A DNA stretch of 27,756 bases. Origin: Macrostomum lignano (lineage: Eukaryota). Positions 794 through 26,200 of this stretch are shown piece by piece; the stretch's first letter is position 1; the number at the start of each line of letters is the position of its first letter. The notes beneath the pieces were generated by a model. That model was not told where the DNA came from and made no database searches. It saw nothing but the letters and a program-made list of their open reading frames with translations. The stretch lies in contig NIVC01001240.1 of NCBI GenBank assembly GCA_002269645.1, forward strand, positions 1-27,756, in the 5' to 3' direction. Position numbers and translations under genes: made by a program.

Positions 794-864
<71 letters not shown>

Positions 865-1900: not shown

Positions 1901-1978
1901 TCGCTTTTTGCAGCCCATTTCGGCTTGCGCGCATTGAATTGAACCAAAGATACGTTTGCCAATGCAACGGAGCTTTTG
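1901..1978 (+). repeat. Outer part of the left TIR of the Tc1-like relic
   Basis: Reverse complement of about 26245-26322 (GCTTTTTGCAGCCCATTT...GGAGCTTTTG), with scattered mismatches. Confidence 0.88.
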
Positions 1979-1995
1979 AGCCGTATGCAGAAAGC
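1979..1995 (+). repeat. Left TIR AGCCGTATGCAGAAAGC
   Basis: 17/17 reverse-complement match to 25651-25667. Confidence 0.93.
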
Positions 1996-4900
1996 TCTGT
2001 CTAGGGTAGTCCGGTCTTGAAAAGCTAGTCTAGACTTGGATTTGGTATGCAGAAATCTCTGTCTAGGGTAGTCCGGTCTTGAAAAGCTAGTCTAGACTTG
2101 GATTTGGTATGCAGAAATCTCTGTCTAGGGTAGTCCGGTCTTGAAAAGCTAGTCTAGACTTGGATTTGGTATGCAGAAATCTCTGTCTAGGGTAGTCCGG
2201 TCTTGAAAAGCTAGTCTAGACTTGGATTTGGTATGCAGAAATCTCTGTCTAGGGTAGTCCGGTCTTGAAAAGCTAGTCTAGACTTGGATTTGGTATGCAG
2301 AAATCTCTGTCTAGGGTAGTCCGGTCTTGAAAAGCTAGTCTAGACTTGGATTTGGTATGCAGAAATCTCTGTCTAGGGTAGTCCGGTCTTGAAAAGCTAG
2401 TCTAGACTTGGATTTGGTATGCAGAAATCTCTGTCTAGGGTAGTCCGGTCTTGAAAAGCTAGTCTAGACTTGGATTTGGTATGCAGAAATCTCTGTCTAG
2501 GGTAGTCCGGTCTTGAAAAGCTAGTCTAGACTTGGATTTGGTATGCAGAAATCTCTGTCTAGGGTAGTCCGGTCTTGAAAAGCTAGTCTAGACTTGGATT
2601 TGGTATGCAGAAATCTCTGTCTAGGGTAGTCCGGTCTTGAAAAGCTAGTCTAGACTTGGATTTGGTATGCAGAAATCTCTGTCTAGGGTAGTCCGGTCTT
2701 GAAAAGCTAGTCTAGACTTGGATTTGGTATGCAGAAATCTCTGTCTAGGGTAGTCCGGTCTTGAAAAGCTAGTCTAGACTTGGATTTGGTATGCAGAAAT
2801 CTCTGTCTAGGGTAGTCCGGTCTTGAAAAGCTAGTCTAGACTTGGATTTGGTATGCAGAAATCTCTGTCTAGGGTAGTCCGGTCTTGAAAAGCTAGTCTA
2901 GACTTGGATTTGGTATGCAGAAATCTCTGTCTAGGGTAGTCCGGTCTTGAAAAGCTAGTCTAGACTTGGATTTGGTATGCAGAAATCTCTGTCTAGGGTA
3001 GTCCGGTCTTGAAAAGCTAGTCTAGACTTGGATTTGGTATGCAGAAATCTCTGTCTAGGGTAGTCCGGTCTTGAAAAGCTAGTCTAGACTTGGATTTGGT
3101 ATGCAGAAATCTCTGTCTAGGGTAGTCCGGTCTTGAAAAGCTAGTCTAGACTTGGATTTGGTATGCAGAAATCTCTGTCTAGGGTAGTCCGGTCTTGAAA
3201 AGCTAGTCTAGACTTGGATTTGGTATGCAGAAATCTCTGTCTAGGGTAGTCCGGTCTTGAAAAGCTAGTCTAGACTTGGATTTGGTATGCAGAAATCTCT
3301 GTCTAGGGTAGTCCGGTCTTGAAAAGCTAGTCTAGACTTGGATTTGGTATGCAGAAATCTCTGTCTAGGGTAGTCCGGTCTTGAAAAGCTAGTCTAGACT
3401 TGGATTTGGTATGCAGAAATCTCTGTCTAGGGTAGTCCGGTCTTGAAAAGCTAGTCTAGACTTGGATTTGGTATGCAGAAATCTCTGTCTAGGGTAGTCC
3501 GGTCTTGAAAAGCTAGTCTAGACTTGGATTTGGTATGCAGAAATCTCTGTCTAGGGTAGTCCGGTCTTGAAAAGCTAGTCTAGACTTGGATTTGGTATGC
3601 AGAAATCTCTGTCTAGGGTAGTCCGGTCTTGAAAAGCTAGTCTAGACTTGGATTTGGTATGCAGAAATCTCTGTCTAGGGTAGTCCGGTCTTGAAAAGCT
3701 AGTCTAGACTTGGATTTGGTATGCAGAAATCTCTGTCTAGGGTAGTCCGGTCTTGAAAAGCTAGTCTAGACTTGGATTTGGTATGCAGAAATCTCTGTCT
3801 AGGGTAGTCCGGTCTTGAAAAGCTAGTCTAGACTTGGATTTGGTATGCAGAAATCTCTGTCTAGGGTAGTCCGGTCTTGAAAAGCTAGTCTAGACTTGGA
3901 TTTGGTATGCAGAAATCTCTGTCTAGGGTAGTCCGGTCTTGAAAAGCTAGTCTAGACTTGGATTTGGTATGCAGAAATCTCTGTCTAGGGTAGTCCGGTC
4001 TTGAAAAGCTAGTCTAGACTTGGATTTGGTATGCAGAAATCTCTGTCTAGGGTAGTCCGGTCTTGAAAAGCTAGTCTAGACTTGGATTTGGTATGCAGAA
4101 ATCTCTGTCTAGGGTAGTCCGGTCTTGAAAAGCTAGTCTAGACTTGGATTTGGTATGCAGAAATCTCTGTCTAGGGTAGTCCGGTCTTGAAAAGCTAGTC
4201 TAGACTTGGATTTGGTATGCAGAAATCTCTGTCTAGGGTAGTCCGGTCTTGAAAAGCTAGTCTAGACTTGGATTTGGTATGCAGAAATCTCTGTCTAGGG
4301 TAGTCCGGTCTTGAAAAGCTAGTCTAGACTTGGATTTGGTATGCAGAAATCTCTGTCTAGGGTAGTCCGGTCTTGAAAAGCTAGTCTAGACTTGGATTTG
4401 GTATGCAGAAATCTCTGTCTAGGGTAGTCCGGTCTTGAAAAGCTAGTCTAGACTTGGATTTGGTATGCAGAAATCTCTGTCTAGGGTAGTCCGGTCTTGA
4501 AAAGCTAGTCTAGACTTGGATTTGGTATGCAGAAATCTCTGTCTAGGGTAGTCCGGTCTTGAAAAGCTAGTCTAGACTTGGATTTGGTATGCAGAAATCT
4601 CTGTCTAGGGTAGTCCGGTCTTGAAAAGCTAGTCTAGACTTGGATTTGGTATGCAGAAATCTCTGTCTAGGGTAGTCCGGTCTTGAAAAGCTAGTCTAGA
4701 CTTGGATTTGGTATGCAGAAATCTCTGTCTAGGGTAGTCCGGTCTTGAAAAGCTAGTCTAGACTTGGATTTGGTATGCAGAAATCTCTGTCTAGGGTAGT
4801 CCGGTCTTGAAAAGCTAGTCTAGACTTGGATTTGGTATGCAGAAATCTCTGTCTAGGGTAGTCCGGTCTTGAAAAGCTAGTCTAGACTTGGATTTGGTAT

Positions 4901-7900
4901 GCAGAAATCTCTGTCTAGGGTAGTCCGGTCTTGAAAAGCTAGTCTAGACTTGGATTTGGTATGCAGAAATCTCTGTCTAGGGTAGTCCGGTCTTGAAAAG
5001 CTAGTCTAGACTTGGATTTGGTATGCAGAAATCTCTGTCTAGGGTAGTCCGGTCTTGAAAAGCTAGTCTAGACTTGGATTTGGTATGCAGAAATCTCTGT
5101 CTAGGGTAGTCCGGTCTTGAAAAGCTAGTCTAGACTTGGATTTGGTATGCAGAAATCTCTGTCTAGGGTAGTCCGGTCTTGAAAAGCTAGTCTAGACTTG
5201 GATTTGGTATGCAGAAATCTCTGTCTAGGGTAGTCCGGTCTTGAAAAGCTAGTCTAGACTTGGATTTGGTATGCAGAAATCTCTGTCTAGGGTAGTCCGG
5301 TCTTGAAAAGCTAGTCTAGACTTGGATTTGGTATGCAGAAATCTCTGTCTAGGGTAGTCCGGTCTTGAAAAGCTAGTCTAGACTTGGATTTGGTATGCAG
5401 AAATCTCTGTCTAGGGTAGTCCGGTCTTGAAAAGCTAGTCTAGACTTGGATTTGGTATGCAGAAATCTCTGTCTAGGGTAGTCCGGTCTTGAAAAGCTAG
5501 TCTAGACTTGGATTTGGTATGCAGAAATCTCTGTCTAGGGTAGTCCGGTCTTGAAAAGCTAGTCTAGACTTGGATTTGGTATGCAGAAATCTCTGTCTAG
5601 GGTAGTCCGGTCTTGAAAAGCTAGTCTAGACTTGGATTTGGTATGCAGAAATCTCTGTCTAGGGTAGTCCGGTCTTGAAAAGCTAGTCTAGACTTGGATT
5701 TGGTATGCAGAAATCTCTGTCTAGGGTAGTCCGGTCTTGAAAAGCTAGTCTAGACTTGGATTTGGTATGCAGAAATCTCTGTCTAGGGTAGTCCGGTCTT
5801 GAAAAGCTAGTCTAGACTTGGATTTGGTATGCAGAAATCTCTGTCTAGGGTAGTCCGGTCTTGAAAAGCTAGTCTAGACTTGGATTTGGTATGCAGAAAT
5901 CTCTGTCTAGGGTAGTCCGGTCTTGAAAAGCTAGTCTAGACTTGGATTTGGTATGCAGAAATCTCTGTCTAGGGTAGTCCGGTCTTGAAAAGCTAGTCTA
6001 GACTTGGATTTGGTATGCAGAAATCTCTGTCTAGGGTAGTCCGGTCTTGAAAAGCTAGTCTAGACTTGGATTTGGTATGCAGAAATCTCTGTCTAGGGTA
6101 GTCCGGTCTTGAAAAGCTAGTCTAGACTTGGATTTGGTATGCAGAAATCTCTGTCTAGGGTAGTCCGGTCTTGAAAAGCTAGTCTAGACTTGGATTTGGT
6201 ATGCAGAAATCTCTGTCTAGGGTAGTCCGGTCTTGAAAAGCTAGTCTAGACTTGGATTTGGTATGCAGAAATCTCTGTCTAGGGTAGTCCGGTCTTGAAA
6301 AGCTAGTCTAGACTTGGATTTGGTATGCAGAAATCTCTGTCTAGGGTAGTCCGGTCTTGAAAAGCTAGTCTAGACTTGGATTTGGTATGCAGAAATCTCT
6401 GTCTAGGGTAGTCCGGTCTTGAAAAGCTAGTCTAGACTTGGATTTGGTATGCAGAAATCTCTGTCTAGGGTAGTCCGGTCTTGAAAAGCTAGTCTAGACT
6501 TGGATTTGGTATGCAGAAATCTCTGTCTAGGGTAGTCCGGTCTTGAAAAGCTAGTCTAGACTTGGATTTGGTATGCAGAAATCTCTGTCTAGGGTAGTCC
6601 GGTCTTGAAAAGCTAGTCTAGACTTGGATTTGGTATGCAGAAATCTCTGTCTAGGGTAGTCCGGTCTTGAAAAGCTAGTCTAGACTTGGATTTGGTATGC
6701 AGAAATCTCTGTCTAGGGTAGTCCGGTCTTGAAAAGCTAGTCTAGACTTGGATTTGGTATGCAGAAATCTCTGTCTAGGGTAGTCCGGTCTTGAAAAGCT
6801 AGTCTAGACTTGGATTTGGTATGCAGAAATCTCTGTCTAGGGTAGTCCGGTCTTGAAAAGCTAGTCTAGACTTGGATTTGGTATGCAGAAATCTCTGTCT
6901 AGGGTAGTCCGGTCTTGAAAAGCTAGTCTAGACTTGGATTTGGTATGCAGAAATCTCTGTCTAGGGTAGTCCGGTCTTGAAAAGCTAGTCTAGACTTGGA
7001 TTTGGTATGCAGAAATCTCTGTCTAGGGTAGTCCGGTCTTGAAAAGCTAGTCTAGACTTGGATTTGGTATGCAGAAATCTCTGTCTAGGGTAGTCCGGTC
7101 TTGAAAAGCTAGTCTAGACTTGGATTTGGTATGCAGAAATCTCTGTCTAGGGTAGTCCGGTCTTGAAAAGCTAGTCTAGACTTGGATTTGGTATGCAGAA
7201 ATCTCTGTCTAGGGTAGTCCGGTCTTGAAAAGCTAGTCTAGACTTGGATTTGGTATGCAGAAATCTCTGTCTAGGGTAGTCCGGTCTTGAAAAGCTAGTC
7301 TAGACTTGGATTTGGTATGCAGAAATCTCTGTCTAGGGTAGTCCGGTCTTGAAAAGCTAGTCTAGACTTGGATTTGGTATGCAGAAATCTCTGTCTAGGG
7401 TAGTCCGGTCTTGAAAAGCTAGTCTAGACTTGGATTTGGTATGCAGAAATCTCTGTCTAGGGTAGTCCGGTCTTGAAAAGCTAGTCTAGACTTGGATTTG
7501 GTATGCAGAAATCTCTGTCTAGGGTAGTCCGGTCTTGAAAAGCTAGTCTAGACTTGGATTTGGTATGCAGAAATCTCTGTCTAGGGTAGTCCGGTCTTGA
7601 AAAGCTAGTCTAGACTTGGATTTGGTATGCAGAAATCTCTGTCTAGGGTAGTCCGGTCTTGAAAAGCTAGTCTAGACTTGGATTTGGTATGCAGAAATCT
7701 CTGTCTAGGGTAGTCCGGTCTTGAAAAGCTAGTCTAGACTTGGATTTGGTATGCAGAAATCTCTGTCTAGGGTAGTCCGGTCTTGAAAAGCTAGTCTAGA
7801 CTTGGATTTGGTATGCAGAAATCTCTGTCTAGGGTAGTCCGGTCTTGAAAAGCTAGTCTAGACTTGGATTTGGTATGCAGAAATCTCTGTCTAGGGTAGT

Positions 7901-10900
7901 CCGGTCTTGAAAAGCTAGTCTAGACTTGGATTTGGTATGCAGAAATCTCTGTCTAGGGTAGTCCGGTCTTGAAAAGCTAGTCTAGACTTGGATTTGGTAT
8001 GCAGAAATCTCTGTCTAGGGTAGTCCGGTCTTGAAAAGCTAGTCTAGACTTGGATTTGGTATGCAGAAATCTCTGTCTAGGGTAGTCCGGTCTTGAAAAG
8101 CTAGTCTAGACTTGGATTTGGTATGCAGAAATCTCTGTCTAGGGTAGTCCGGTCTTGAAAAGCTAGTCTAGACTTGGATTTGGTATGCAGAAATCTCTGT
8201 CTAGGGTAGTCCGGTCTTGAAAAGCTAGTCTAGACTTGGATTTGGTATGCAGAAATCTCTGTCTAGGGTAGTCCGGTCTTGAAAAGCTAGTCTAGACTTG
8301 GATTTGGTATGCAGAAATCTCTGTCTAGGGTAGTCCGGTCTTGAAAAGCTAGTCTAGACTTGGATTTGGTATGCAGAAATCTCTGTCTAGGGTAGTCCGG
8401 TCTTGAAAAGCTAGTCTAGACTTGGATTTGGTATGCAGAAATCTCTGTCTAGGGTAGTCCGGTCTTGAAAAGCTAGTCTAGACTTGGATTTGGTATGCAG
8501 AAATCTCTGTCTAGGGTAGTCCGGTCTTGAAAAGCTAGTCTAGACTTGGATTTGGTATGCAGAAATCTCTGTCTAGGGTAGTCCGGTCTTGAAAAGCTAG
8601 TCTAGACTTGGATTTGGTATGCAGAAATCTCTGTCTAGGGTAGTCCGGTCTTGAAAAGCTAGTCTAGACTTGGATTTGGTATGCAGAAATCTCTGTCTAG
8701 GGTAGTCCGGTCTTGAAAAGCTAGTCTAGACTTGGATTTGGTATGCAGAAATCTCTGTCTAGGGTAGTCCGGTCTTGAAAAGCTAGTCTAGACTTGGATT
8801 TGGTATGCAGAAATCTCTGTCTAGGGTAGTCCGGTCTTGAAAAGCTAGTCTAGACTTGGATTTGGTATGCAGAAATCTCTGTCTAGGGTAGTCCGGTCTT
8901 GAAAAGCTAGTCTAGACTTGGATTTGGTATGCAGAAATCTCTGTCTAGGGTAGTCCGGTCTTGAAAAGCTAGTCTAGACTTGGATTTGGTATGCAGAAAT
9001 CTCTGTCTAGGGTAGTCCGGTCTTGAAAAGCTAGTCTAGACTTGGATTTGGTATGCAGAAATCTCTGTCTAGGGTAGTCCGGTCTTGAAAAGCTAGTCTA
9101 GACTTGGATTTGGTATGCAGAAATCTCTGTCTAGGGTAGTCCGGTCTTGAAAAGCTAGTCTAGACTTGGATTTGGTATGCAGAAATCTCTGTCTAGGGTA
9201 GTCCGGTCTTGAAAAGCTAGTCTAGACTTGGATTTGGTATGCAGAAATCTCTGTCTAGGGTAGTCCGGTCTTGAAAAGCTAGTCTAGACTTGGATTTGGT
9301 ATGCAGAAATCTCTGTCTAGGGTAGTCCGGTCTTGAAAAGCTAGTCTAGACTTGGATTTGGTATGCAGAAATCTCTGTCTAGGGTAGTCCGGTCTTGAAA
9401 AGCTAGTCTAGACTTGGATTTGGTATGCAGAAATCTCTGTCTAGGGTAGTCCGGTCTTGAAAAGCTAGTCTAGACTTGGATTTGGTATGCAGAAATCTCT
9501 GTCTAGGGTAGTCCGGTCTTGAAAAGCTAGTCTAGACTTGGATTTGGTATGCAGAAATCTCTGTCTAGGGTAGTCCGGTCTTGAAAAGCTAGTCTAGACT
9601 TGGATTTGGTATGCAGAAATCTCTGTCTAGGGTAGTCCGGTCTTGAAAAGCTAGTCTAGACTTGGATTTGGTATGCAGAAATCTCTGTCTAGGGTAGTCC
9701 GGTCTTGAAAAGCTAGTCTAGACTTGGATTTGGTATGCAGAAATCTCTGTCTAGGGTAGTCCGGTCTTGAAAAGCTAGTCTAGACTTGGATTTGGTATGC
9801 AGAAATCTCTGTCTAGGGTAGTCCGGTCTTGAAAAGCTAGTCTAGACTTGGATTTGGTATGCAGAAATCTCTGTCTAGGGTAGTCCGGTCTTGAAAAGCT
9901 AGTCTAGACTTGGATTTGGTATGCAGAAATCTCTGTCTAGGGTAGTCCGGTCTTGAAAAGCTAGTCTAGACTTGGATTTGGTATGCAGAAATCTCTGTCT
10001 AGGGTAGTCCGGTCTTGAAAAGCTAGTCTAGACTTGGATTTGGTATGCAGAAATCTCTGTCTAGGGTAGTCCGGTCTTGAAAAGCTAGTCTAGACTTGGA
10101 TTTGGTATGCAGAAATCTCTGTCTAGGGTAGTCCGGTCTTGAAAAGCTAGTCTAGACTTGGATTTGGTATGCAGAAATCTCTGTCTAGGGTAGTCCGGTC
10201 TTGAAAAGCTAGTCTAGACTTGGATTTGGTATGCAGAAATCTCTGTCTAGGGTAGTCCGGTCTTGAAAAGCTAGTCTAGACTTGGATTTGGTATGCAGAA
10301 ATCTCTGTCTAGGGTAGTCCGGTCTTGAAAAGCTAGTCTAGACTTGGATTTGGTATGCAGAAATCTCTGTCTAGGGTAGTCCGGTCTTGAAAAGCTAGTC
10401 TAGACTTGGATTTGGTATGCAGAAATCTCTGTCTAGGGTAGTCCGGTCTTGAAAAGCTAGTCTAGACTTGGATTTGGTATGCAGAAATCTCTGTCTAGGG
10501 TAGTCCGGTCTTGAAAAGCTAGTCTAGACTTGGATTTGGTATGCAGAAATCTCTGTCTAGGGTAGTCCGGTCTTGAAAAGCTAGTCTAGACTTGGATTTG
10601 GTATGCAGAAATCTCTGTCTAGGGTAGTCCGGTCTTGAAAAGCTAGTCTAGACTTGGATTTGGTATGCAGAAATCTCTGTCTAGGGTAGTCCGGTCTTGA
10701 AAAGCTAGTCTAGACTTGGATTTGGTATGCAGAAATCTCTGTCTAGGGTAGTCCGGTCTTGAAAAGCTAGTCTAGACTTGGATTTGGTATGCAGAAATCT
10801 CTGTCTAGGGTAGTCCGGTCTTGAAAAGCTAGTCTAGACTTGGATTTGGTATGCAGAAATCTCTGTCTAGGGTAGTCCGGTCTTGAAAAGCTAGTCTAGA

Positions 10901-13900: not shown

Positions 13901-16900
13901 CTGTCTAGGGTAGTCCGGTCTTGAAAAGCTAGTCTAGACTTGGATTTGGTATGCAGAAATCTCTGTCTAGGGTAGTCCGGTCTTGAAAAGCTAGTCTAGA
14001 CTTGGATTTGGTATGCAGAAATCTCTGTCTAGGGTAGTCCGGTCTTGAAAAGCTAGTCTAGACTTGGATTTGGTATGCAGAAATCTCTGTCTAGGGTAGT
14101 CCGGTCTTGAAAAGCTAGTCTAGACTTGGATTTGGTATGCAGAAATCTCTGTCTAGGGTAGTCCGGTCTTGAAAAGCTAGTCTAGACTTGGATTTGGTAT
14201 GCAGAAATCTCTGTCTAGGGTAGTCCGGTCTTGAAAAGCTAGTCTAGACTTGGATTTGGTATGCAGAAATCTCTGTCTAGGGTAGTCCGGTCTTGAAAAG
14301 CTAGTCTAGACTTGGATTTGGTATGCAGAAATCTCTGTCTAGGGTAGTCCGGTCTTGAAAAGCTAGTCTAGACTTGGATTTGGTATGCAGAAATCTCTGT
14401 CTAGGGTAGTCCGGTCTTGAAAAGCTAGTCTAGACTTGGATTTGGTATGCAGAAATCTCTGTCTAGGGTAGTCCGGTCTTGAAAAGCTAGTCTAGACTTG
14501 GATTTGGTATGCAGAAATCTCTGTCTAGGGTAGTCCGGTCTTGAAAAGCTAGTCTAGACTTGGATTTGGTATGCAGAAATCTCTGTCTAGGGTAGTCCGG
14601 TCTTGAAAAGCTAGTCTAGACTTGGATTTGGTATGCAGAAATCTCTGTCTAGGGTAGTCCGGTCTTGAAAAGCTAGTCTAGACTTGGATTTGGTATGCAG
14701 AAATCTCTGTCTAGGGTAGTCCGGTCTTGAAAAGCTAGTCTAGACTTGGATTTGGTATGCAGAAATCTCTGTCTAGGGTAGTCCGGTCTTGAAAAGCTAG
14801 TCTAGACTTGGATTTGGTATGCAGAAATCTCTGTCTAGGGTAGTCCGGTCTTGAAAAGCTAGTCTAGACTTGGATTTGGTATGCAGAAATCTCTGTCTAG
14901 GGTAGTCCGGTCTTGAAAAGCTAGTCTAGACTTGGATTTGGTATGCAGAAATCTCTGTCTAGGGTAGTCCGGTCTTGAAAAGCTAGTCTAGACTTGGATT
15001 TGGTATGCAGAAATCTCTGTCTAGGGTAGTCCGGTCTTGAAAAGCTAGTCTAGACTTGGATTTGGTATGCAGAAATCTCTGTCTAGGGTAGTCCGGTCTT
15101 GAAAAGCTAGTCTAGACTTGGATTTGGTATGCAGAAATCTCTGTCTAGGGTAGTCCGGTCTTGAAAAGCTAGTCTAGACTTGGATTTGGTATGCAGAAAT
15201 CTCTGTCTAGGGTAGTCCGGTCTTGAAAAGCTAGTCTAGACTTGGATTTGGTATGCAGAAATCTCTGTCTAGGGTAGTCCGGTCTTGAAAAGCTAGTCTA
15301 GACTTGGATTTGGTATGCAGAAATCTCTGTCTAGGGTAGTCCGGTCTTGAAAAGCTAGTCTAGACTTGGATTTGGTATGCAGAAATCTCTGTCTAGGGTA
15401 GTCCGGTCTTGAAAAGCTAGTCTAGACTTGGATTTGGTATGCAGAAATCTCTGTCTAGGGTAGTCCGGTCTTGAAAAGCTAGTCTAGACTTGGATTTGGT
15501 ATGCAGAAATCTCTGTCTAGGGTAGTCCGGTCTTGAAAAGCTAGTCTAGACTTGGATTTGGTATGCAGAAATCTCTGTCTAGGGTAGTCCGGTCTTGAAA
15601 AGCTAGTCTAGACTTGGATTTGGTATGCAGAAATCTCTGTCTAGGGTAGTCCGGTCTTGAAAAGCTAGTCTAGACTTGGATTTGGTATGCAGAAATCTCT
15701 GTCTAGGGTAGTCCGGTCTTGAAAAGCTAGTCTAGACTTGGATTTGGTATGCAGAAATCTCTGTCTAGGGTAGTCCGGTCTTGAAAAGCTAGTCTAGACT
15801 TGGATTTGGTATGCAGAAATCTCTGTCTAGGGTAGTCCGGTCTTGAAAAGCTAGTCTAGACTTGGATTTGGTATGCAGAAATCTCTGTCTAGGGTAGTCC
15901 GGTCTTGAAAAGCTAGTCTAGACTTGGATTTGGTATGCAGAAATCTCTGTCTAGGGTAGTCCGGTCTTGAAAAGCTAGTCTAGACTTGGATTTGGTATGC
16001 AGAAATCTCTGTCTAGGGTAGTCCGGTCTTGAAAAGCTAGTCTAGACTTGGATTTGGTATGCAGAAATCTCTGTCTAGGGTAGTCCGGTCTTGAAAAGCT
16101 AGTCTAGACTTGGATTTGGTATGCAGAAATCTCTGTCTAGGGTAGTCCGGTCTTGAAAAGCTAGTCTAGACTTGGATTTGGTATGCAGAAATCTCTGTCT
16201 AGGGTAGTCCGGTCTTGAAAAGCTAGTCTAGACTTGGATTTGGTATGCAGAAATCTCTGTCTAGGGTAGTCCGGTCTTGAAAAGCTAGTCTAGACTTGGA
16301 TTTGGTATGCAGAAATCTCTGTCTAGGGTAGTCCGGTCTTGAAAAGCTAGTCTAGACTTGGATTTGGTATGCAGAAATCTCTGTCTAGGGTAGTCCGGTC
16401 TTGAAAAGCTAGTCTAGACTTGGATTTGGTATGCAGAAATCTCTGTCTAGGGTAGTCCGGTCTTGAAAAGCTAGTCTAGACTTGGATTTGGTATGCAGAA
16501 ATCTCTGTCTAGGGTAGTCCGGTCTTGAAAAGCTAGTCTAGACTTGGATTTGGTATGCAGAAATCTCTGTCTAGGGTAGTCCGGTCTTGAAAAGCTAGTC
16601 TAGACTTGGATTTGGTATGCAGAAATCTCTGTCTAGGGTAGTCCGGTCTTGAAAAGCTAGTCTAGACTTGGATTTGGTATGCAGAAATCTCTGTCTAGGG
16701 TAGTCCGGTCTTGAAAAGCTAGTCTAGACTTGGATTTGGTATGCAGAAATCTCTGTCTAGGGTAGTCCGGTCTTGAAAAGCTAGTCTAGACTTGGATTTG
16801 GTATGCAGAAATCTCTGTCTAGGGTAGTCCGGTCTTGAAAAGCTAGTCTAGACTTGGATTTGGTATGCAGAAATCTCTGTCTAGGGTAGTCCGGTCTTGA

Positions 16901-19900
16901 AAAGCTAGTCTAGACTTGGATTTGGTATGCAGAAATCTCTGTCTAGGGTAGTCCGGTCTTGAAAAGCTAGTCTAGACTTGGATTTGGTATGCAGAAATCT
17001 CTGTCTAGGGTAGTCCGGTCTTGAAAAGCTAGTCTAGACTTGGATTTGGTATGCAGAAATCTCTGTCTAGGGTAGTCCGGTCTTGAAAAGCTAGTCTAGA
17101 CTTGGATTTGGTATGCAGAAATCTCTGTCTAGGGTAGTCCGGTCTTGAAAAGCTAGTCTAGACTTGGATTTGGTATGCAGAAATCTCTGTCTAGGGTAGT
17201 CCGGTCTTGAAAAGCTAGTCTAGACTTGGATTTGGTATGCAGAAATCTCTGTCTAGGGTAGTCCGGTCTTGAAAAGCTAGTCTAGACTTGGATTTGGTAT
17301 GCAGAAATCTCTGTCTAGGGTAGTCCGGTCTTGAAAAGCTAGTCTAGACTTGGATTTGGTATGCAGAAATCTCTGTCTAGGGTAGTCCGGTCTTGAAAAG
17401 CTAGTCTAGACTTGGATTTGGTATGCAGAAATCTCTGTCTAGGGTAGTCCGGTCTTGAAAAGCTAGTCTAGACTTGGATTTGGTATGCAGAAATCTCTGT
17501 CTAGGGTAGTCCGGTCTTGAAAAGCTAGTCTAGACTTGGATTTGGTATGCAGAAATCTCTGTCTAGGGTAGTCCGGTCTTGAAAAGCTAGTCTAGACTTG
17601 GATTTGGTATGCAGAAATCTCTGTCTAGGGTAGTCCGGTCTTGAAAAGCTAGTCTAGACTTGGATTTGGTATGCAGAAATCTCTGTCTAGGGTAGTCCGG
17701 TCTTGAAAAGCTAGTCTAGACTTGGATTTGGTATGCAGAAATCTCTGTCTAGGGTAGTCCGGTCTTGAAAAGCTAGTCTAGACTTGGATTTGGTATGCAG
17801 AAATCTCTGTCTAGGGTAGTCCGGTCTTGAAAAGCTAGTCTAGACTTGGATTTGGTATGCAGAAATCTCTGTCTAGGGTAGTCCGGTCTTGAAAAGCTAG
17901 TCTAGACTTGGATTTGGTATGCAGAAATCTCTGTCTAGGGTAGTCCGGTCTTGAAAAGCTAGTCTAGACTTGGATTTGGTATGCAGAAATCTCTGTCTAG
18001 GGTAGTCCGGTCTTGAAAAGCTAGTCTAGACTTGGATTTGGTATGCAGAAATCTCTGTCTAGGGTAGTCCGGTCTTGAAAAGCTAGTCTAGACTTGGATT
18101 TGGTATGCAGAAATCTCTGTCTAGGGTAGTCCGGTCTTGAAAAGCTAGTCTAGACTTGGATTTGGTATGCAGAAATCTCTGTCTAGGGTAGTCCGGTCTT
18201 GAAAAGCTAGTCTAGACTTGGATTTGGTATGCAGAAATCTCTGTCTAGGGTAGTCCGGTCTTGAAAAGCTAGTCTAGACTTGGATTTGGTATGCAGAAAT
18301 CTCTGTCTAGGGTAGTCCGGTCTTGAAAAGCTAGTCTAGACTTGGATTTGGTATGCAGAAATCTCTGTCTAGGGTAGTCCGGTCTTGAAAAGCTAGTCTA
18401 GACTTGGATTTGGTATGCAGAAATCTCTGTCTAGGGTAGTCCGGTCTTGAAAAGCTAGTCTAGACTTGGATTTGGTATGCAGAAATCTCTGTCTAGGGTA
18501 GTCCGGTCTTGAAAAGCTAGTCTAGACTTGGATTTGGTATGCAGAAATCTCTGTCTAGGGTAGTCCGGTCTTGAAAAGCTAGTCTAGACTTGGATTTGGT
18601 ATGCAGAAATCTCTGTCTAGGGTAGTCCGGTCTTGAAAAGCTAGTCTAGACTTGGATTTGGTATGCAGAAATCTCTGTCTAGGGTAGTCCGGTCTTGAAA
18701 AGCTAGTCTAGACTTGGATTTGGTATGCAGAAATCTCTGTCTAGGGTAGTCCGGTCTTGAAAAGCTAGTCTAGACTTGGATTTGGTATGCAGAAATCTCT
18801 GTCTAGGGTAGTCCGGTCTTGAAAAGCTAGTCTAGACTTGGATTTGGTATGCAGAAATCTCTGTCTAGGGTAGTCCGGTCTTGAAAAGCTAGTCTAGACT
18901 TGGATTTGGTATGCAGAAATCTCTGTCTAGGGTAGTCCGGTCTTGAAAAGCTAGTCTAGACTTGGATTTGGTATGCAGAAATCTCTGTCTAGGGTAGTCC
19001 GGTCTTGAAAAGCTAGTCTAGACTTGGATTTGGTATGCAGAAATCTCTGTCTAGGGTAGTCCGGTCTTGAAAAGCTAGTCTAGACTTGGATTTGGTATGC
19101 AGAAATCTCTGTCTAGGGTAGTCCGGTCTTGAAAAGCTAGTCTAGACTTGGATTTGGTATGCAGAAATCTCTGTCTAGGGTAGTCCGGTCTTGAAAAGCT
19201 AGTCTAGACTTGGATTTGGTATGCAGAAATCTCTGTCTAGGGTAGTCCGGTCTTGAAAAGCTAGTCTAGACTTGGATTTGGTATGCAGAAATCTCTGTCT
19301 AGGGTAGTCCGGTCTTGAAAAGCTAGTCTAGACTTGGATTTGGTATGCAGAAATCTCTGTCTAGGGTAGTCCGGTCTTGAAAAGCTAGTCTAGACTTGGA
19401 TTTGGTATGCAGAAATCTCTGTCTAGGGTAGTCCGGTCTTGAAAAGCTAGTCTAGACTTGGATTTGGTATGCAGAAATCTCTGTCTAGGGTAGTCCGGTC
19501 TTGAAAAGCTAGTCTAGACTTGGATTTGGTATGCAGAAATCTCTGTCTAGGGTAGTCCGGTCTTGAAAAGCTAGTCTAGACTTGGATTTGGTATGCAGAA
19601 ATCTCTGTCTAGGGTAGTCCGGTCTTGAAAAGCTAGTCTAGACTTGGATTTGGTATGCAGAAATCTCTGTCTAGGGTAGTCCGGTCTTGAAAAGCTAGTC
19701 TAGACTTGGATTTGGTATGCAGAAATCTCTGTCTAGGGTAGTCCGGTCTTGAAAAGCTAGTCTAGACTTGGATTTGGTATGCAGAAATCTCTGTCTAGGG
19801 TAGTCCGGTCTTGAAAAGCTAGTCTAGACTTGGATTTGGTATGCAGAAATCTCTGTCTAGGGTAGTCCGGTCTTGAAAAGCTAGTCTAGACTTGGATTTG

Positions 19901-22900
19901 GTATGCAGAAATCTCTGTCTAGGGTAGTCCGGTCTTGAAAAGCTAGTCTAGACTTGGATTTGGTATGCAGAAATCTCTGTCTAGGGTAGTCCGGTCTTGA
20001 AAAGCTAGTCTAGACTTGGATTTGGTATGCAGAAATCTCTGTCTAGGGTAGTCCGGTCTTGAAAAGCTAGTCTAGACTTGGATTTGGTATGCAGAAATCT
20101 CTGTCTAGGGTAGTCCGGTCTTGAAAAGCTAGTCTAGACTTGGATTTGGTATGCAGAAATCTCTGTCTAGGGTAGTCCGGTCTTGAAAAGCTAGTCTAGA
20201 CTTGGATTTGGTATGCAGAAATCTCTGTCTAGGGTAGTCCGGTCTTGAAAAGCTAGTCTAGACTTGGATTTGGTATGCAGAAATCTCTGTCTAGGGTAGT
20301 CCGGTCTTGAAAAGCTAGTCTAGACTTGGATTTGGTATGCAGAAATCTCTGTCTAGGGTAGTCCGGTCTTGAAAAGCTAGTCTAGACTTGGATTTGGTAT
20401 GCAGAAATCTCTGTCTAGGGTAGTCCGGTCTTGAAAAGCTAGTCTAGACTTGGATTTGGTATGCAGAAATCTCTGTCTAGGGTAGTCCGGTCTTGAAAAG
20501 CTAGTCTAGACTTGGATTTGGTATGCAGAAATCTCTGTCTAGGGTAGTCCGGTCTTGAAAAGCTAGTCTAGACTTGGATTTGGTATGCAGAAATCTCTGT
20601 CTAGGGTAGTCCGGTCTTGAAAAGCTAGTCTAGACTTGGATTTGGTATGCAGAAATCTCTGTCTAGGGTAGTCCGGTCTTGAAAAGCTAGTCTAGACTTG
20701 GATTTGGTATGCAGAAATCTCTGTCTAGGGTAGTCCGGTCTTGAAAAGCTAGTCTAGACTTGGATTTGGTATGCAGAAATCTCTGTCTAGGGTAGTCCGG
20801 TCTTGAAAAGCTAGTCTAGACTTGGATTTGGTATGCAGAAATCTCTGTCTAGGGTAGTCCGGTCTTGAAAAGCTAGTCTAGACTTGGATTTGGTATGCAG
20901 AAATCTCTGTCTAGGGTAGTCCGGTCTTGAAAAGCTAGTCTAGACTTGGATTTGGTATGCAGAAATCTCTGTCTAGGGTAGTCCGGTCTTGAAAAGCTAG
21001 TCTAGACTTGGATTTGGTATGCAGAAATCTCTGTCTAGGGTAGTCCGGTCTTGAAAAGCTAGTCTAGACTTGGATTTGGTATGCAGAAATCTCTGTCTAG
21101 GGTAGTCCGGTCTTGAAAAGCTAGTCTAGACTTGGATTTGGTATGCAGAAATCTCTGTCTAGGGTAGTCCGGTCTTGAAAAGCTAGTCTAGACTTGGATT
21201 TGGTATGCAGAAATCTCTGTCTAGGGTAGTCCGGTCTTGAAAAGCTAGTCTAGACTTGGATTTGGTATGCAGAAATCTCTGTCTAGGGTAGTCCGGTCTT
21301 GAAAAGCTAGTCTAGACTTGGATTTGGTATGCAGAAATCTCTGTCTAGGGTAGTCCGGTCTTGAAAAGCTAGTCTAGACTTGGATTTGGTATGCAGAAAT
21401 CTCTGTCTAGGGTAGTCCGGTCTTGAAAAGCTAGTCTAGACTTGGATTTGGTATGCAGAAATCTCTGTCTAGGGTAGTCCGGTCTTGAAAAGCTAGTCTA
21501 GACTTGGATTTGGTATGCAGAAATCTCTGTCTAGGGTAGTCCGGTCTTGAAAAGCTAGTCTAGACTTGGATTTGGTATGCAGAAATCTCTGTCTAGGGTA
21601 GTCCGGTCTTGAAAAGCTAGTCTAGACTTGGATTTGGTATGCAGAAATCTCTGTCTAGGGTAGTCCGGTCTTGAAAAGCTAGTCTAGACTTGGATTTGGT
21701 ATGCAGAAATCTCTGTCTAGGGTAGTCCGGTCTTGAAAAGCTAGTCTAGACTTGGATTTGGTATGCAGAAATCTCTGTCTAGGGTAGTCCGGTCTTGAAA
21801 AGCTAGTCTAGACTTGGATTTGGTATGCAGAAATCTCTGTCTAGGGTAGTCCGGTCTTGAAAAGCTAGTCTAGACTTGGATTTGGTATGCAGAAATCTCT
21901 GTCTAGGGTAGTCCGGTCTTGAAAAGCTAGTCTAGACTTGGATTTGGTATGCAGAAATCTCTGTCTAGGGTAGTCCGGTCTTGAAAAGCTAGTCTAGACT
22001 TGGATTTGGTATGCAGAAATCTCTGTCTAGGGTAGTCCGGTCTTGAAAAGCTAGTCTAGACTTGGATTTGGTATGCAGAAATCTCTGTCTAGGGTAGTCC
22101 GGTCTTGAAAAGCTAGTCTAGACTTGGATTTGGTATGCAGAAATCTCTGTCTAGGGTAGTCCGGTCTTGAAAAGCTAGTCTAGACTTGGATTTGGTATGC
22201 AGAAATCTCTGTCTAGGGTAGTCCGGTCTTGAAAAGCTAGTCTAGACTTGGATTTGGTATGCAGAAATCTCTGTCTAGGGTAGTCCGGTCTTGAAAAGCT
22301 AGTCTAGACTTGGATTTGGTATGCAGAAATCTCTGTCTAGGGTAGTCCGGTCTTGAAAAGCTAGTCTAGACTTGGATTTGGTATGCAGAAATCTCTGTCT
22401 AGGGTAGTCCGGTCTTGAAAAGCTAGTCTAGACTTGGATTTGGTATGCAGAAATCTCTGTCTAGGGTAGTCCGGTCTTGAAAAGCTAGTCTAGACTTGGA
22501 TTTGGTATGCAGAAATCTCTGTCTAGGGTAGTCCGGTCTTGAAAAGCTAGTCTAGACTTGGATTTGGTATGCAGAAATCTCTGTCTAGGGTAGTCCGGTC
22601 TTGAAAAGCTAGTCTAGACTTGGATTTGGTATGCAGAAATCTCTGTCTAGGGTAGTCCGGTCTTGAAAAGCTAGTCTAGACTTGGATTTGGTATGCAGAA
22701 ATCTCTGTCTAGGGTAGTCCGGTCTTGAAAAGCTAGTCTAGACTTGGATTTGGTATGCAGAAATCTCTGTCTAGGGTAGTCCGGTCTTGAAAAGCTAGTC
22801 TAGACTTGGATTTGGTATGCAGAAATCTCTGTCTAGGGTAGTCCGGTCTTGAAAAGCTAGTCTAGACTTGGATTTGGTATGCAGAAATCTCTGTCTAGGG

Positions 22901-25553
22901 TAGTCCGGTCTTGAAAAGCTAGTCTAGACTTGGATTTGGTATGCAGAAATCTCTGTCTAGGGTAGTCCGGTCTTGAAAAGCTAGTCTAGACTTGGATTTG
23001 GTATGCAGAAATCTCTGTCTAGGGTAGTCCGGTCTTGAAAAGCTAGTCTAGACTTGGATTTGGTATGCAGAAATCTCTGTCTAGGGTAGTCCGGTCTTGA
23101 AAAGCTAGTCTAGACTTGGATTTGGTATGCAGAAATCTCTGTCTAGGGTAGTCCGGTCTTGAAAAGCTAGTCTAGACTTGGATTTGGTATGCAGAAATCT
23201 CTGTCTAGGGTAGTCCGGTCTTGAAAAGCTAGTCTAGACTTGGATTTGGTATGCAGAAATCTCTGTCTAGGGTAGTCCGGTCTTGAAAAGCTAGTCTAGA
23301 CTTGGATTTGGTATGCAGAAATCTCTGTCTAGGGTAGTCCGGTCTTGAAAAGCTAGTCTAGACTTGGATTTGGTATGCAGAAATCTCTGTCTAGGGTAGT
23401 CCGGTCTTGAAAAGCTAGTCTAGACTTGGATTTGGTATGCAGAAATCTCTGTCTAGGGTAGTCCGGTCTTGAAAAGCTAGTCTAGACTTGGATTTGGTAT
23501 GCAGAAATCTCTGTCTAGGGTAGTCCGGTCTTGAAAAGCTAGTCTAGACTTGGATTTGGTATGCAGAAATCTCTGTCTAGGGTAGTCCGGTCTTGAAAAG
23601 CTAGTCTAGACTTGGATTTGGTATGCAGAAATCTCTGTCTAGGGTAGTCCGGTCTTGAAAAGCTAGTCTAGACTTGGATTTGGTATGCAGAAATCTCTGT
23701 CTAGGGTAGTCCGGTCTTGAAAAGCTAGTCTAGACTTGGATTTGGTATGCAGAAATCTCTGTCTAGGGTAGTCCGGTCTTGAAAAGCTAGTCTAGACTTG
23801 GATTTGGTATGCAGAAATCTCTGTCTAGGGTAGTCCGGTCTTGAAAAGCTAGTCTAGACTTGGATTTGGTATGCAGAAATCTCTGTCTAGGGTAGTCCGG
23901 TCTTGAAAAGCTAGTCTAGACTTGGATTTGGTATGCAGAAATCTCTGTCTAGGGTAGTCCGGTCTTGAAAAGCTAGTCTAGACTTGGATTTGGTATGCAG
24001 AAATCTCTGTCTAGGGTAGTCCGGTCTTGAAAAGCTAGTCTAGACTTGGATTTGGTATGCAGAAATCTCTGTCTAGGGTAGTCCGGTCTTGAAAAGCTAG
24101 TCTAGACTTGGATTTGGTATGCAGAAATCTCTGTCTAGGGTAGTCCGGTCTTGAAAAGCTAGTCTAGACTTGGATTTGGTATGCAGAAATCTCTGTCTAG
24201 GGTAGTCCGGTCTTGAAAAGCTAGTCTAGACTTGGATTTGGTATGCAGAAATCTCTGTCTAGGGTAGTCCGGTCTTGAAAAGCTAGTCTAGACTTGGATT
24301 TGGTATGCAGAAATCTCTGTCTAGGGTAGTCCGGTCTTGAAAAGCTAGTCTAGACTTGGATTTGGTATGCAGAAATCTCTGTCTAGGGTAGTCCGGTCTT
24401 GAAAAGCTAGTCTAGACTTGGATTTGGTATGCAGAAATCTCTGTCTAGGGTAGTCCGGTCTTGAAAAGCTAGTCTAGACTTGGATTTGGTATGCAGAAAT
24501 CTCTGTCTAGGGTAGTCCGGTCTTGAAAAGCTAGTCTAGACTTGGATTTGGTATGCAGAAATCTCTGTCTAGGGTAGTCCGGTCTTGAAAAGCTAGTCTA
24601 GACTTGGATTTGGTATGCAGAAATCTCTGTCTAGGGTAGTCCGGTCTTGAAAAGCTAGTCTAGACTTGGATTTGGTATGCAGAAATCTCTGTCTAGGGTA
24701 GTCCGGTCTTGAAAAGCTAGTCTAGACTTGGATTTGGTATGCAGAAATCTCTGTCTAGGGTAGTCCGGTCTTGAAAAGCTAGTCTAGACTTGGATTTGGT
24801 ATGCAGAAATCTCTGTCTAGGGTAGTCCGGTCTTGAAAAGCTAGTCTAGACTTGGATTTGGTATGCAGAAATCTCTGTCTAGGGTAGTCCGGTCTTGAAA
24901 AGCTAGTCTAGACTTGGATTTGGTATGCAGAAATCTCTGTCTAGGGTAGTCCGGTCTTGAAAAGCTAGTCTAGACTTGGATTTGGTATGCAGAAATCTCT
25001 GTCTAGGGTAGTCCGGTCTTGAAAAGCTAGTCTAGACTTGGATTTGGTATGCAGAAATCTCTGTCTAGGGTAGTCCGGTCTTGAAAAGCTAGTCTAGACT
25101 TGGATTTGGTATGCAGAAATCTCTGTCTAGGGTAGTCCGGTCTTGAAAAGCTAGTCTAGACTTGGATTTGGTATGCAGAAATCTCTGTCTAGGGTAGTCC
25201 GGTCTTGAAAAGCTAGTCTAGACTTGGATTTGGTATGCAGAAATCTCTGTCTAGGGTAGTCCGGTCTTGAAAAGCTAGTCTAGACTTGGATTTGGTATGC
25301 AGAAATCTCTGTCTAGGGTAGTCCGGTCTTGAAAAGCTAGTCTCGACTTGGATTTGGTATGCAGAAAGCTCTGTCTAGGGTAGTCCGGTCTTGAAAAGCT
25401 AGTCTAGACTTGGATTTGGTATGCAGAAATCTCTGTCTAGGGTAGTCCAGTCTTGAAAAGCTAGTCTAGACTTGGATTTGGTATGCAGAAAGCTCTGTCT
25501 AGGGTAGTCCGGTCTTGAAAAGCTAGTCTAGACTTGGATTTGGTATGCAGAAA
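1983..25553. repeat. 62-bp satellite, 380 full units plus 11-bp partial; consensus GTATGCAGAAATCTCTGTCTAGGGTAGTCCGGTCTTGAAAAGCTAGTCTAGACTTGGATTTG
   Basis: Unit starts at 1983+62n, with the last partial start at 25543. The 60-nt lines shift by 2 nt throughout. Variants seen only at 1994, 25344, 25368, 25449 and 25492. Confidence 0.99.
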
Positions 25554-25650
25554 CACAAAGTTAGACCAGTCTACTATAGCAGAACTAGGCTAGCTAGACC
25601 ATAGACTATAGACTGAACTACCCAAGTCCGGACTAGCTAGTCTGGACTAG
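25554..25650. other. Unique right subterminal region of the MITE-like element with palindromic AGTCYRGACT motifs
   Basis: AGTCCGGACT (25625-25634) and AGTCTGGACT (25639-25648) match motifs in the satellite unit. The region is CTAG/TAG-rich like the unit. Confidence 0.7.
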
Positions 25651-25667
25651 GCTTTCTGCATACGGCT
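25651..25667 (-). repeat. Right TIR of the MITE-like element
   Basis: GCTTTCTGCATACGGCT is the reverse complement of 1979-1995. Confidence 0.93.
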
Positions 25668-25670
25668 TAG

Positions 25671-25713
25671 TCTAGGTAGCAAGGCTGGCACAGCGGCATT
25701 TAACTTGGTCAAA
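25671..25713 (+). repeat. Inner part of the interrupted left TIR of the Tc1-like relic
   Basis: TCTAGGTAGCAAGGCTGGCACAGCGGCATTTAACTTGG aligns with the reverse complement of about 26201-26244 (TCTATGGTAGCAAGGCTGACACAGCAGCATTTGATTTGG). Confidence 0.85.
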
Positions 25714-25729
25714 ACACTCGTGAGCCATT

Positions 25730-26189
25730 GGCAAACTCTTGCCTTCTCGTAACTGTCTGTGGGTTGTTGCGTACAGCTGGAATGTCAGACAAAAATTTTC
25801 AGTCGCTTTTGCAGAGCTCTGATAGTCGAAATATAATAACCAACTGAAACTGTTCCTTTGACTTCTGCTGCATTTTCTGCAACGTCAACAAAGGGTTCGT
25901 CTCAACTGCATCAAGTAGCAGTTGGACTTGAGGCTCTCGAGCAACTTGCCTTGGCGATTGCCACCCTTTCGCAGGCAATCTCTGCCGGGAGAGTTCCAAC
26001 GCGCTGCTGGATGCTGTAATCCATCTTTTCTTTTACATTCAGCAACCTTGCAATGTACTTTGGGTGTTCACCTCTGTCAAGTGCTTCGATCACAAGCCAA
26101 TGGAATTCGTTCAACAGCCTAGCACATGGTCCACGATTCTGGGGCTGATCTGCTTCTCCACAGCAGTTGCAAATGAAGCTATCGACCAA
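25730..26189 (-). pseudogene. Frameshifted N-terminal DNA-binding region of an IS630/Tc1-like transposase; DDE domain absent
   Basis: Stitched frames read LLNEFHWLVIEALDRGEHPKYIARLLNVKEKMDYSIQQR (HTH-like), KGGNRQGKLLE (GGxR linker, 25965-25954), EPQVQLLLDAVETNPLLTLQKMQQKSKEQFQLVI then ISTIRAL (second HTH-like), and IPAVRNNPQTVTRRQEFA (PxxRN..R motif before the catalytic domain). The motif order was recognised by eye, with no database search. Confidence 0.72.
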
Positions 26190-26200
26190 TTTGATGCTTT

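What the first reader, a model, noticed from the sequence alone, without database searches (positions are those of the whole stretch)
1979..25667. A 23.6-kb satellite born from a transposon end and still inside its parent element
Seen: the unit starts with GTATGCAGAAA, bases 5-15 of the element's TIR, and the first unit overlaps the real left TIR. The array ends on one more GTATGCAGAAA, followed by about 100 bp of unique DNA and the right TIR. Reduced to one unit, the element is 191 bp. Established: satellites can derive from MITE-internal repeats. Inference: the 11-bp direct repeat bounding the unit seeded amplification by slippage, unequal exchange or rolling-circle copying of a 62-bp circle. 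The result is about 380 partial transposon ends and possibly a giant cassette that a trans-acting transposase could still move. This is the strongest candidate for an undescribed system here.
Basis: partly seen in the sequence, partly recalled or inferred. Interest (0 to 1): 0.75.

Follow-up and report, generated by a model that had tools for sequence, protein, structure and literature searches.

The report
Transposon arm amplified into 23.6-kb satellite
A small non-coding inverted-repeat transposon, nested inside another one, has had 62 bp of its left arm copied 380 times in tandem; it is a very clean and very large example of the already known route from transposon to satellite DNA.

Summary
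The array runs 1983-25553 as 380 units of exactly 62 bp plus a final 11-mer. It lies between two perfect 17-bp inverted ends (1979-1995 and 25651-25667). Unit 1 starts at base 5 of the left end. A one-unit version of the element would be 191 bp and folds as a strong hairpin.

New evidence supports the transposon reading. Bases 26200-26322 are an inverted, uninterrupted copy of the insertion site. Compared with that copy, exactly 1979-25670 is extra, which implies a 3-bp duplication (TTG/TAG). The element sits in one arm of a 730-bp, TA-flanked inverted-repeat element.

All five variant units lie at the array edges (unit 1 and units 377-380), and three of them keep the G found in the terminal repeat. 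The other 375 units are identical, which points to a very recent burst.

No relative was found in any collection I could search, and the organism is unknown. Copy number, family membership, the 11-bp seeding idea and present mobility are therefore untested.

This is not an undescribed system. Satellites derived from a transposon's terminal repeat or interior are documented (Tetris/TIR-220, Xmix/Xstir, miDNA4, DTC84). It is a new, extreme member of a known kind.

The parts
1976..1978 (+). Left copy of the putative 3-bp target-site duplication (TTG)
   Evidence: Removing 1979-25670 gives the best alignment to the uninterrupted paralog (score 186 against 180-182 for other joins). The reconstructed site then differs from the paralog by a single 1-bp indel.
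1979..1995 (+). Left terminal inverted repeat AGCCGTATGCAGAAAGC (17 bp, perfect)
   Evidence: 0 of 1000 shuffles reached more than 12 bp
1983..25553 (+). Tandem array of 380 units of 62 bp plus a terminal 11-mer. 375 units are identical to GTATGCAGAAATCTCTGTCTAGGGTAGTCCGGTCTTGAAAAGCTAGTCTAGACTTGGATTTG
   Evidence: The unit is itself a hairpin (-6.9 kcal/mol, z -2.35; dimer z -4.4). No ORF of 20 aa or more in the sampled stretch 3000-3400, which lies in the run of identical units.
1983..2044 (+). Unit 1, which overlaps the true left terminal repeat and carries the G state at unit position 12
25295..25542 (+). Units 377-380, the only other variant units: A50C, T12G, G31A, T12G
25543..25553 (+). 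Terminal partial unit GTATGCAGAAA. In a one-unit element it would be the second copy of an 11-bp direct repeat.
25554..25650 (+). Non-repeated right arm with AGTCYRGACT-type palindromes. In reverse complement it is a diverged copy of the left arm/unit.
   Evidence: I5; 0 of 500 shuffles. 25543-25667 folds at -23.4 kcal/mol, z -4.05.
25651..25667 (-). Right terminal inverted repeat (17 bp, perfect)
25668..25670 (+). Right copy of the putative 3-bp target-site duplication (TAG; 2 of 3 bases match the left copy)
1901..1978 (+). Host element, left arm, part 1 (interrupted by the insertion); TA at 1899-1900
25671..25714 (+). Host element, left arm, part 2
   Evidence: (I1)
25715..26199 (.). Host element interior (485 bp). 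It holds a 92-aa ORF with no Pfam family and no homologue.
26200..26322 (-). Host element right arm, the uninterrupted paralog of the insertion site ('empty site'; junction near 26245-26248); TA at 26323-26324
   Evidence: Arms of 122 and 123 bp, 86.2% identical

Best explanation
This is a non-coding DNA transposon of the MITE type (a miniature inverted-repeat element). In one-unit form it would be about 191 bp, with 17-bp perfect terminal inverted repeats that extend imperfectly to about 45 bp. It inserted into the left arm of an older 730-bp, TA-flanked inverted-repeat element and probably made a 3-bp target duplication. Bases 5-66 of its left arm were then amplified in tandem in place. This segment holds most of the terminal repeat and the subterminal palindromes, and in the one-unit form it is bounded by the 11-mer GTATGCAGAAA. 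The amplification had at least two phases. An older small array survives as the edge units, which show mixed G/T at position 12 and two private substitutions. One T-type unit then expanded very recently to about 375 identical copies. The expansion would have occurred by unequal sister-chromatid exchange or replication template switching, or by rolling-circle copying of a multi-unit circle followed by re-integration. Shown: the anatomy, the discreteness of the insertion, and the edge-versus-core pattern. Inferred: the order of events, the 11-bp seeding and the copying mechanism. The array has no coding capacity and no evident cellular function. It is best read as a nascent satellite caught while its parent element's ends are still intact.
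For: Array regularity. The full 17-mer is present only at the two ends, in inverted orientation. Arm similarity continues beyond the terminal repeat. The 191-nt reconstruction folds at -43.2 kcal/mol, z = -7.3, with 0 of 200 shuffles as stable. The paralogous uninterrupted site at 26200-26322 aligns to 1899-1978 at 87.5% and to 25667-25714 at 83.7%, and the best join removes 1979-25670. The four outermost bases AGCC are shared by both ends but are not part of the repeat unit. All 5 variant units are unit 1 and units 377-380, and 3 of them carry the G found in both terminal repeats. By my arithmetic, that exact placement has a probability of about 1 in C(380,5), or 1.6e-11. There are 2 private substitutions in 310 bp of edge units against 0 in 23,250 bp of core. 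Published precedents for the same route: PMC4079207, PMC12628747, PMC3879986, PMC9659126.
Against: No second copy of the element, terminal repeat or unit was found anywhere. The unit 30-mer gave 0 hits in viral contigs. The 20 hits to the terminal-repeat pattern in metagenome and prokaryotic genome collections are all single chance matches. Family status is therefore unproven. The two copies of the target duplication differ (TTG against TAG), and the comparison is with a paralog only 86% identical, not with an allele. 375 identical units could partly reflect assembly or polishing, and the copy number is unverified. In-place expansion, rather than transposition of an already long array, is only weakly argued, from the mismatch in the target duplication set against a mutation-free core.
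Confidence: 0.7

Rival explanations
1. The array is native to a foldback-like transposon family: elements of this family normally carry long tandem arrays, and this copy transposed into the host element already carrying a long array as a large cassette.
For: Both terminal repeats are intact and a 3-bp duplication is still recognisable. Foldback-type elements with tandem repeats next to their ends are known, and Tetris TIR-220 derives from part of the terminal domain (PMC4079207).
Against: The array is on one arm only; the right arm is 114 bp with no tandem units. The core has 0 substitutions in 23,250 bp while the target duplication already shows a mismatch and the edge units have diverged. 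This fits growth after insertion better.
Confidence: 0.12
2. The satellite came first and the ends are secondary. An existing 62-bp satellite block, perhaps as extrachromosomal circular DNA, integrated here. The apparent terminal inverted repeat is only an inverted, diverged monomer at one array end.
For: The right arm is an inverted, diverged copy of the unit. The unit is rich in palindromes, so inversions and hairpins form easily.
Against: The perfect inverted match extends 4 bp (AGCC) beyond the unit at both ends, and those 4 bp are absent from all internal unit junctions, which read TTTG. The insertion boundaries defined by the paralog coincide with the ends of the inverted repeat, plus a 3-bp duplication. 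The edge units, not the core, carry the terminal-repeat state G.
Confidence: 0.08
3. The length or homogeneity is an assembly artefact. A real but much shorter or more variable array was inflated or over-polished into 375 identical units.
For: 375 of 380 units are identical, and long perfect arrays are hard to assemble. No reads are available here.
Against: The edge units retain individual variants in an ordered, biologically sensible pattern, both junctions are unique sequence, and there is no indel in 23.6 kb. This rival concerns copy number only and does not affect the element-plus-array structure.
Confidence: 0.15

Closest known systems
Tetris foldback-like transposon and its TIR-220 satellite in Drosophila virilis (PMC4079207)
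   Same: The tandem repeat lies next to the terminal domain and apparently arose by duplicating part of the terminal inverted repeat (37 bp shared at about 80%). Arrays grew inside the element to satellite size. The authors invoke unequal crossing-over and rolling-circle copying.
   Different: The Tetris unit is about 220 bp, repeats occur in both terminal repeats, and the longest arrays reported have 66 copies and are thought to have disrupted the element. Here the unit is 62 bp, there are 380 copies on one arm only, and both ends and a recognisable target duplication are intact. Sequence relatedness was not testable.
miDNA4 Tc1/mariner MITE carrying a satellite in Xenopus tropicalis (Scalvenzi & Pollet 2014, as summarised in PMC12628747 and PMC9659126)
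   Same: It is a MITE carrying one to many copies of a satellite monomer. The monomer is flanked by short direct repeats (5 bp or more) proposed to drive expansion by microhomology, and long arrays later lose their ends.
   Different: There the monomer is thought to have been captured and is internal. Here the monomer is the element's own terminal arm, the flanking direct repeat is 11 bp, and the inferred target duplication is 3 bp rather than TA.
Xmix MITE / Xstir tandem repeats in Xenopus laevis (Hikosaka & Kawahara 2004, via PMC12628747 and PMC9659126)
   Same: The satellite is listed as derived from the terminal repeat or internal sequence of a MITE, and MITE, composite and pure-array forms coexist.
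   Different: The proposed mechanism joins neighbouring elements by stem-loop excision. There is no sign of that here, since every unit lacks the outermost 4 bp and all spacings are exactly 62.
DTC84 / pearl tandem-repeat-containing MITEs of bivalves (PMC3879986)
   Same: The modular layout is flank, core repeats, flank, with short inverted repeats. A palindrome lies near the unit junction, and repeat variants sit in position-specific order.
   Different: Those elements have at most 5 core repeats, an AA target duplication and an attached microsatellite, and their core repeats are not part of the terminal repeat.

Membership tests
MITE / non-autonomous TIR (class II) transposon | Terminal inverted repeats at both ends | tested here: met
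   17 of 17 bp perfect, extending imperfectly to about 45 bp. Chance is excluded.
MITE / non-autonomous TIR (class II) transposon | Target-site duplication flanking the ends | tested here: inconclusive
   Comparison with the in-window paralog implies 3 extra bp. The copies are TTG and TAG, 2 of 3 identical. The paralog is only about 86% identical, so this is suggestive and not proof.
MITE / non-autonomous TIR (class II) transposon | Discrete insertion relative to an empty site | tested here: met
   26200-26322 (reverse complement) is colinear with 1901-1978 plus 25671-25714, and nothing lies between them. The site is paralogous, not allelic or orthologous.
MITE / non-autonomous TIR (class II) transposon | No coding capacity; small size; hairpin potential | tested here: met
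   No ORF of 20 aa or more in the sampled array stretch 3000-3400, which lies in the run of identical units. The one-unit form is 191 bp and folds at z = -7.3. The actual copy is 23.7 kb only because of the array.
MITE / non-autonomous TIR (class II) transposon | Multiple dispersed copies in the genome | not testable with these tools
   The source genome is not available. Viral, metagenome and prokaryotic-genome scans gave nothing beyond chance.
PIF/Harbinger-type (Tourist-like) MITE | 3-bp target duplication of consensus TWA (from general knowledge of the superfamily) | tested here: not met
   The length fits at 3 bp, but the sequence is TTG/TAG, not TTA/TAA. The superfamily stays unassigned; other superfamilies with 3-bp duplications are not excluded.
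Foldback (FB-like) elements | Long inverted terminal repeats built of tandem repeats on both arms | tested here: not met
   The array is on the left arm only. The right arm is 114 bp and has no tandem units.
Helitron/Helentron-borne satellite arrays | No terminal inverted repeats, 5'-TC...CTRR-3' ends, no target duplication (from general knowledge) | tested here: not met
   The ends read AGCC...GGCT and form a 17-bp inverted repeat.
Satellite DNA (classical) | Long head-to-tail array of a non-coding monomer with high homogeneity | tested here: met
   380 units, 23.6 kb, 99% matches or better.
Satellite DNA (classical) | Genome-wide abundance, multiple arrays or a heterochromatic location | not testable with these tools
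   Only one locus is visible.
Tc1/mariner-type MITE (host element only) | TA target duplication and terminal inverted repeats | tested here: met
   TA at 1899-1900 and 26323-26324; arms of 122 and 123 bp at 86.2% identity. No transposase similarity was found, so the superfamily is inferred from the TA duplication alone.

The most novel reading that the evidence does not exclude
The 23.7-kb element, with both 17-bp ends intact, is still recognised by a transposase supplied in trans. It would then move as a giant cassette, seeding full-size satellite arrays at new loci in a single cut-and-paste step, so that satellites disperse by transposition of whole arrays and not of monomers.
Probability: 0.08. 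Interest if true: 0.6.

Novelty: new member of a known kind. Interest (0 to 1): 0.3.

Why it matters
The transition from transposon to satellite is usually reconstructed from scattered, decayed intermediates. Here one locus shows every stage together: both parental ends intact, the probable target duplication, an uninterrupted copy of the target 0.5 kb away, older diverged edge units, and a mutation-free core of 375 units. If long reads confirm it, the locus is a good natural substrate for three measurements. One is how fast such arrays grow. Another is whether an 11-bp subterminal direct repeat seeds them. The third is how array length affects the mobility of the parent element. It does not reveal a new kind of system.

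Tried and rejected
1. Looking for relatives. The unit 30-mer gave 0 hits in viral contigs. The terminal-repeat 20-mer pattern gave 8 metagenome and 12 prokaryotic-genome hits. All are single 17-21-nt (once 26-nt) matches, mostly in bacterial or archaeal contigs, with no extension and no similarity to the flanks, so they are chance.
2. Literature string search for the 11-mer and the terminal-repeat halves found only unrelated primers.
3. Identifying the organism through flank ORFs. Pfam found nothing significant. Rfam gave 0 hits and no tRNA genes were found. Five exact-ORF look-ups found no record. The 92-aa ORF in the host element looked to me like a transposase helix-turn-helix, but it has no Pfam hit and no homologue, so I dropped that idea.
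4. Using a recurring ORF within the array to find other arrays through the protein index. The array has no ORF of 20 aa or more.
5. A TA (2-bp) target duplication for the inner element needs two indels plus a mutated copy, so it was rejected in favour of 3 bp (scores).
6. Origin by double or self insertion of whole elements was rejected, because the units lack the outermost 4 bp and the spacing is invariant.
7. Helitron and foldback membership were rejected (see Membership tests).
8. The flanks show no credible coding sequence, and protein hits could not retrieve copies of a non-coding element.

Full report
OBSERVATION

The window holds one very regular tandem array at 1983-25553. TRF reports period 62, 380.2 copies, 99% matches, no indels and score 47107. 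The 11-mer GTATGCAGAAA occurs 381 times on the + strand, and every one of the 380 spacings is exactly 62 bp. Of the 380 full units, 375 are identical.

The 17-mer AGCCGTATGCAGAAAGC, even allowing 2 mismatches, occurs only twice in the window: at 1979-1995 on the + strand and at 25651-25667 on the - strand. None of 100 shuffles gave a match. In 1000 shuffles of the two end regions, the longest inverted exact match never exceeded 12 bp.

Unit 1 starts at base 5 of the left terminal repeat. The array ends with one more 11-mer (25543-25553), then 97 bp of non-repeated DNA, then the right terminal repeat. Collapsing the array to one unit gives 191 bp.

BLAST of the non-array parts of the window against each other and explicit alignment give two results.
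- Bases 26200-26322, read in reverse complement, are colinear with 1901-1978 joined to 25671-25714.
- The two copies are 122 and 123 bp long and 86.2% identical.

That stretch is an uninterrupted paralog of the insertion site. It reads ...GGAGCTTTTG^TCTATGGTAGC.... The filled site reads ...GGAGCTTTTG[AGCCG...CGGCT]TAGTCTAGGTAGC....

The join that best matches the paralog removes 1979-25670 (score 186, against 180-182 for other joins). That is the element plus 3 bp, which implies a 3-bp target duplication, TTG on the left and TAG on the right. The reconstructed site then differs from the paralog by a single 1-bp indel.

The two 122-bp copies are themselves the inverted arms of a 730-bp element. 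It has TA on both sides (1899-1900 and 26323-26324) and a 485-bp interior. The locus is therefore a nested insertion: the array-bearing element sits inside the left arm of an older, probably Tc1/mariner-type, non-autonomous element.

IS IT A TRANSPOSON WITH AN INTERNAL ARRAY, OR A SATELLITE WITH ACCIDENTAL INVERTED ENDS?

1. The perfect inverted match includes four outermost bases (AGCC) present at both ends. These bases are absent from every internal unit junction, which reads TTTG.
2. The indel boundaries defined by the paralog coincide with the ends of the inverted repeat.
3. Inverted similarity continues past the 17 bp. The left arm aligns to the reverse complement of the right arm, including a 13-of-14 block TAGTCCGG(T/A)CTTG, and 0 of 500 shuffles reached the observed score.

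The 191-nt reconstruction folds as a long hairpin at -43.2 kcal/mol, z = -7.3. Both arms are built from AGTCYRGACT-type palindromes. The 62-bp unit is itself a small hairpin (z = -2.35; dimer z = -4.4). The sampled array stretch 3000-3400 has no ORF of 20 aa or more.

HISTORY READ FROM THE UNITS

All five non-consensus units lie at the array edges: unit 1 and units 377-380.
- Units 1, 378 and 380 have G at position 12, the state found in both terminal repeats (GCAGAAAGC). G is therefore ancestral, and the T carried by the other 377 units is derived.
- Units 377 and 379 each carry one private substitution.

The edge units thus show 2 private changes in 310 bp, while the core shows none in 23,250 bp. 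By my arithmetic, the chance that five variant units fall exactly on those five edge positions is about 1/C(380,5), or 1.6e-11.

This is the classic pattern of poorly homogenised array ends around a very young or continuously homogenised core. It argues for at least two phases: a small old array with mixed G and T units, then a recent burst from one T unit.

MECHANISM

The array length of n x 62 + 11 bp means one of two things.
- The one-unit ancestor already had GTATGCAGAAA twice, 62 bp apart. That would be a subterminal direct repeat of the terminal-repeat core, which from general knowledge is common around transposase-binding sites.
- Alternatively, a later deletion trimmed the last unit.

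The first option gives an obvious substrate for the initial duplication, by slippage, template switching or unequal exchange. It is also the microhomology model proposed for the Xenopus miDNA4 MITE, as summarised in PMC12628747. It is plausible but not shown.

For the burst, the sequence alone cannot separate unequal sister-chromatid exchange, break-induced or slipped replication, and rolling-circle copying. A double-stranded 62-bp circle is physically unlikely, since the persistence length of DNA is about 150 bp (general knowledge). A multimer circle or a single-stranded template would be needed.

Growth in place is favoured only weakly. The target duplication already carries a mismatch, while the core carries no mutation.

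SEARCH FOR RELATIVES AND FOR THE ORGANISM

Every route failed.
- The unit 30-mer gave 0 hits in viral contigs.
- The terminal-repeat pattern gave 8 metagenome and 12 prokaryotic-genome hits. All are single chance matches of 17-21 nt (one of 26 nt) with no extension.
- The literature string search found only primers.
- Five exact-ORF look-ups found nothing.
- The longest ORF of the host element has no Pfam family and no homologue.
- There were no Rfam hits and no tRNA genes.

The flanks have 43-46% G+C and CpG observed/expected of 0.8-0.96. The long (CAGA)n and minisatellite tracts indicate a eukaryote. Nothing more can be said about the source.

COMPARISON WITH WHAT IS KNOWN

The phenomenon is well documented.
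- The Tetris element of Drosophila virilis has TIR-220 repeats that appear to derive from part of its terminal domain, and they grew within the element to arrays of up to 66 copies (PMC4079207).
- Xmix/Xstir and miDNA4 in Xenopus are MITEs whose terminal repeat or interior gave rise to satellites (PMC12628747, PMC9659126).
- DTC84 and pearl elements of bivalves carry up to five core repeats between short inverted repeats, with a palindrome near the unit junction (PMC3879986).

This locus differs in degree, not in kind. It has 380 copies (23.6 kb) on one arm only. The unit overlaps the terminal repeat itself. Both ends, a probable target duplication and a neighbouring empty-site paralog are all preserved.

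It fails the tests for a foldback element, because the array is on one arm only. It fails the tests for a Helitron, because it has inverted terminal repeats and the wrong end sequences. The 3-bp duplication is not the TWA of PIF/Harbinger, so the superfamily is left open.

VERDICT

The structural interpretation is supported and strengthened. The claims of an undescribed system and of a 62-bp circle are not supported. Seeding by the 11-bp repeat, present mobility and true copy number are open.

Novelty: a new, unusually large and unusually well-preserved member of a known kind. Interest is about 0.3. It would be higher if the element proved to move as a whole cassette, which I rate as unlikely at about 0.08.

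No step in this work touched anything that needed referral.

Noticed in passing
window 1899-1978 + 25671-26324: A 730-bp non-coding element with 122- and 123-bp inverted arms (86.2% identical) and TA on both sides. It is probably a Tc1/mariner-type MITE and hosts the array-bearing element in its left arm. Its 485-bp interior holds a 92-aa ORF (25911-26189, minus strand) with no Pfam family and no homologue.
   Followed up: yes
window 47-887: An 840-bp compound microsatellite: (CAGA)n with a (CTGA)n block at about 619-757, interrupted by CTAA, AATA and other variants (TRF: period 4, 211 copies, 91% matches).
   Followed up: no
window 882-1363: A 14-bp minisatellite, ACAGACTGAAGGAC, in 34 copies at 97% matches, directly abutting the microsatellite. 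Its motif looks like CAGA + CTGA + AGGA, so it appears to have grown out of the microsatellite. Three different tandem arrays lie within 2 kb, which suggests a region or genome prone to tandem expansion.
   Followed up: no
window 27068-27559: A segmental direct duplication. 27120-27272 and 27405-27559 are 98.7% identical over 155 bp. 27068-27112 and 27272-27318 are 95.7% identical over 47 bp. The layout is A-B-A'-x-B'. It creates a spurious 187-aa ORF (27132-27695) with only sub-threshold Pfam noise.
   Followed up: partly
window 25622-25651: A near-perfect 30-bp palindrome, CCAAGTCCGGACTAGCTAGTCTGGACTAGG, just inside the right terminal repeat. The same AGTCYRGACT motif recurs once per unit (AGTCTAGACT, 379 copies). 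It may be a subterminal protein-binding motif or a cruciform-forming site.
   Followed up: partly
window 1983-1995 vs 1901-1915 / 26308-26322: The inner element's terminal-repeat core TGCAGAAAGC resembles the reverse complement of the host element's terminus (GCTTTTTGCA), matching 9 of 10 bases, but in the opposite orientation relative to the element end. This was seen by eye and is probably coincidence. No statistical test was run.
   Followed up: no
window 1792-1807 and 1829-1844: An exact 16-bp direct repeat, AGGTCGCTGCTCTCGC, with copies starting 37 bp apart, in the unique left flank.
   Followed up: no
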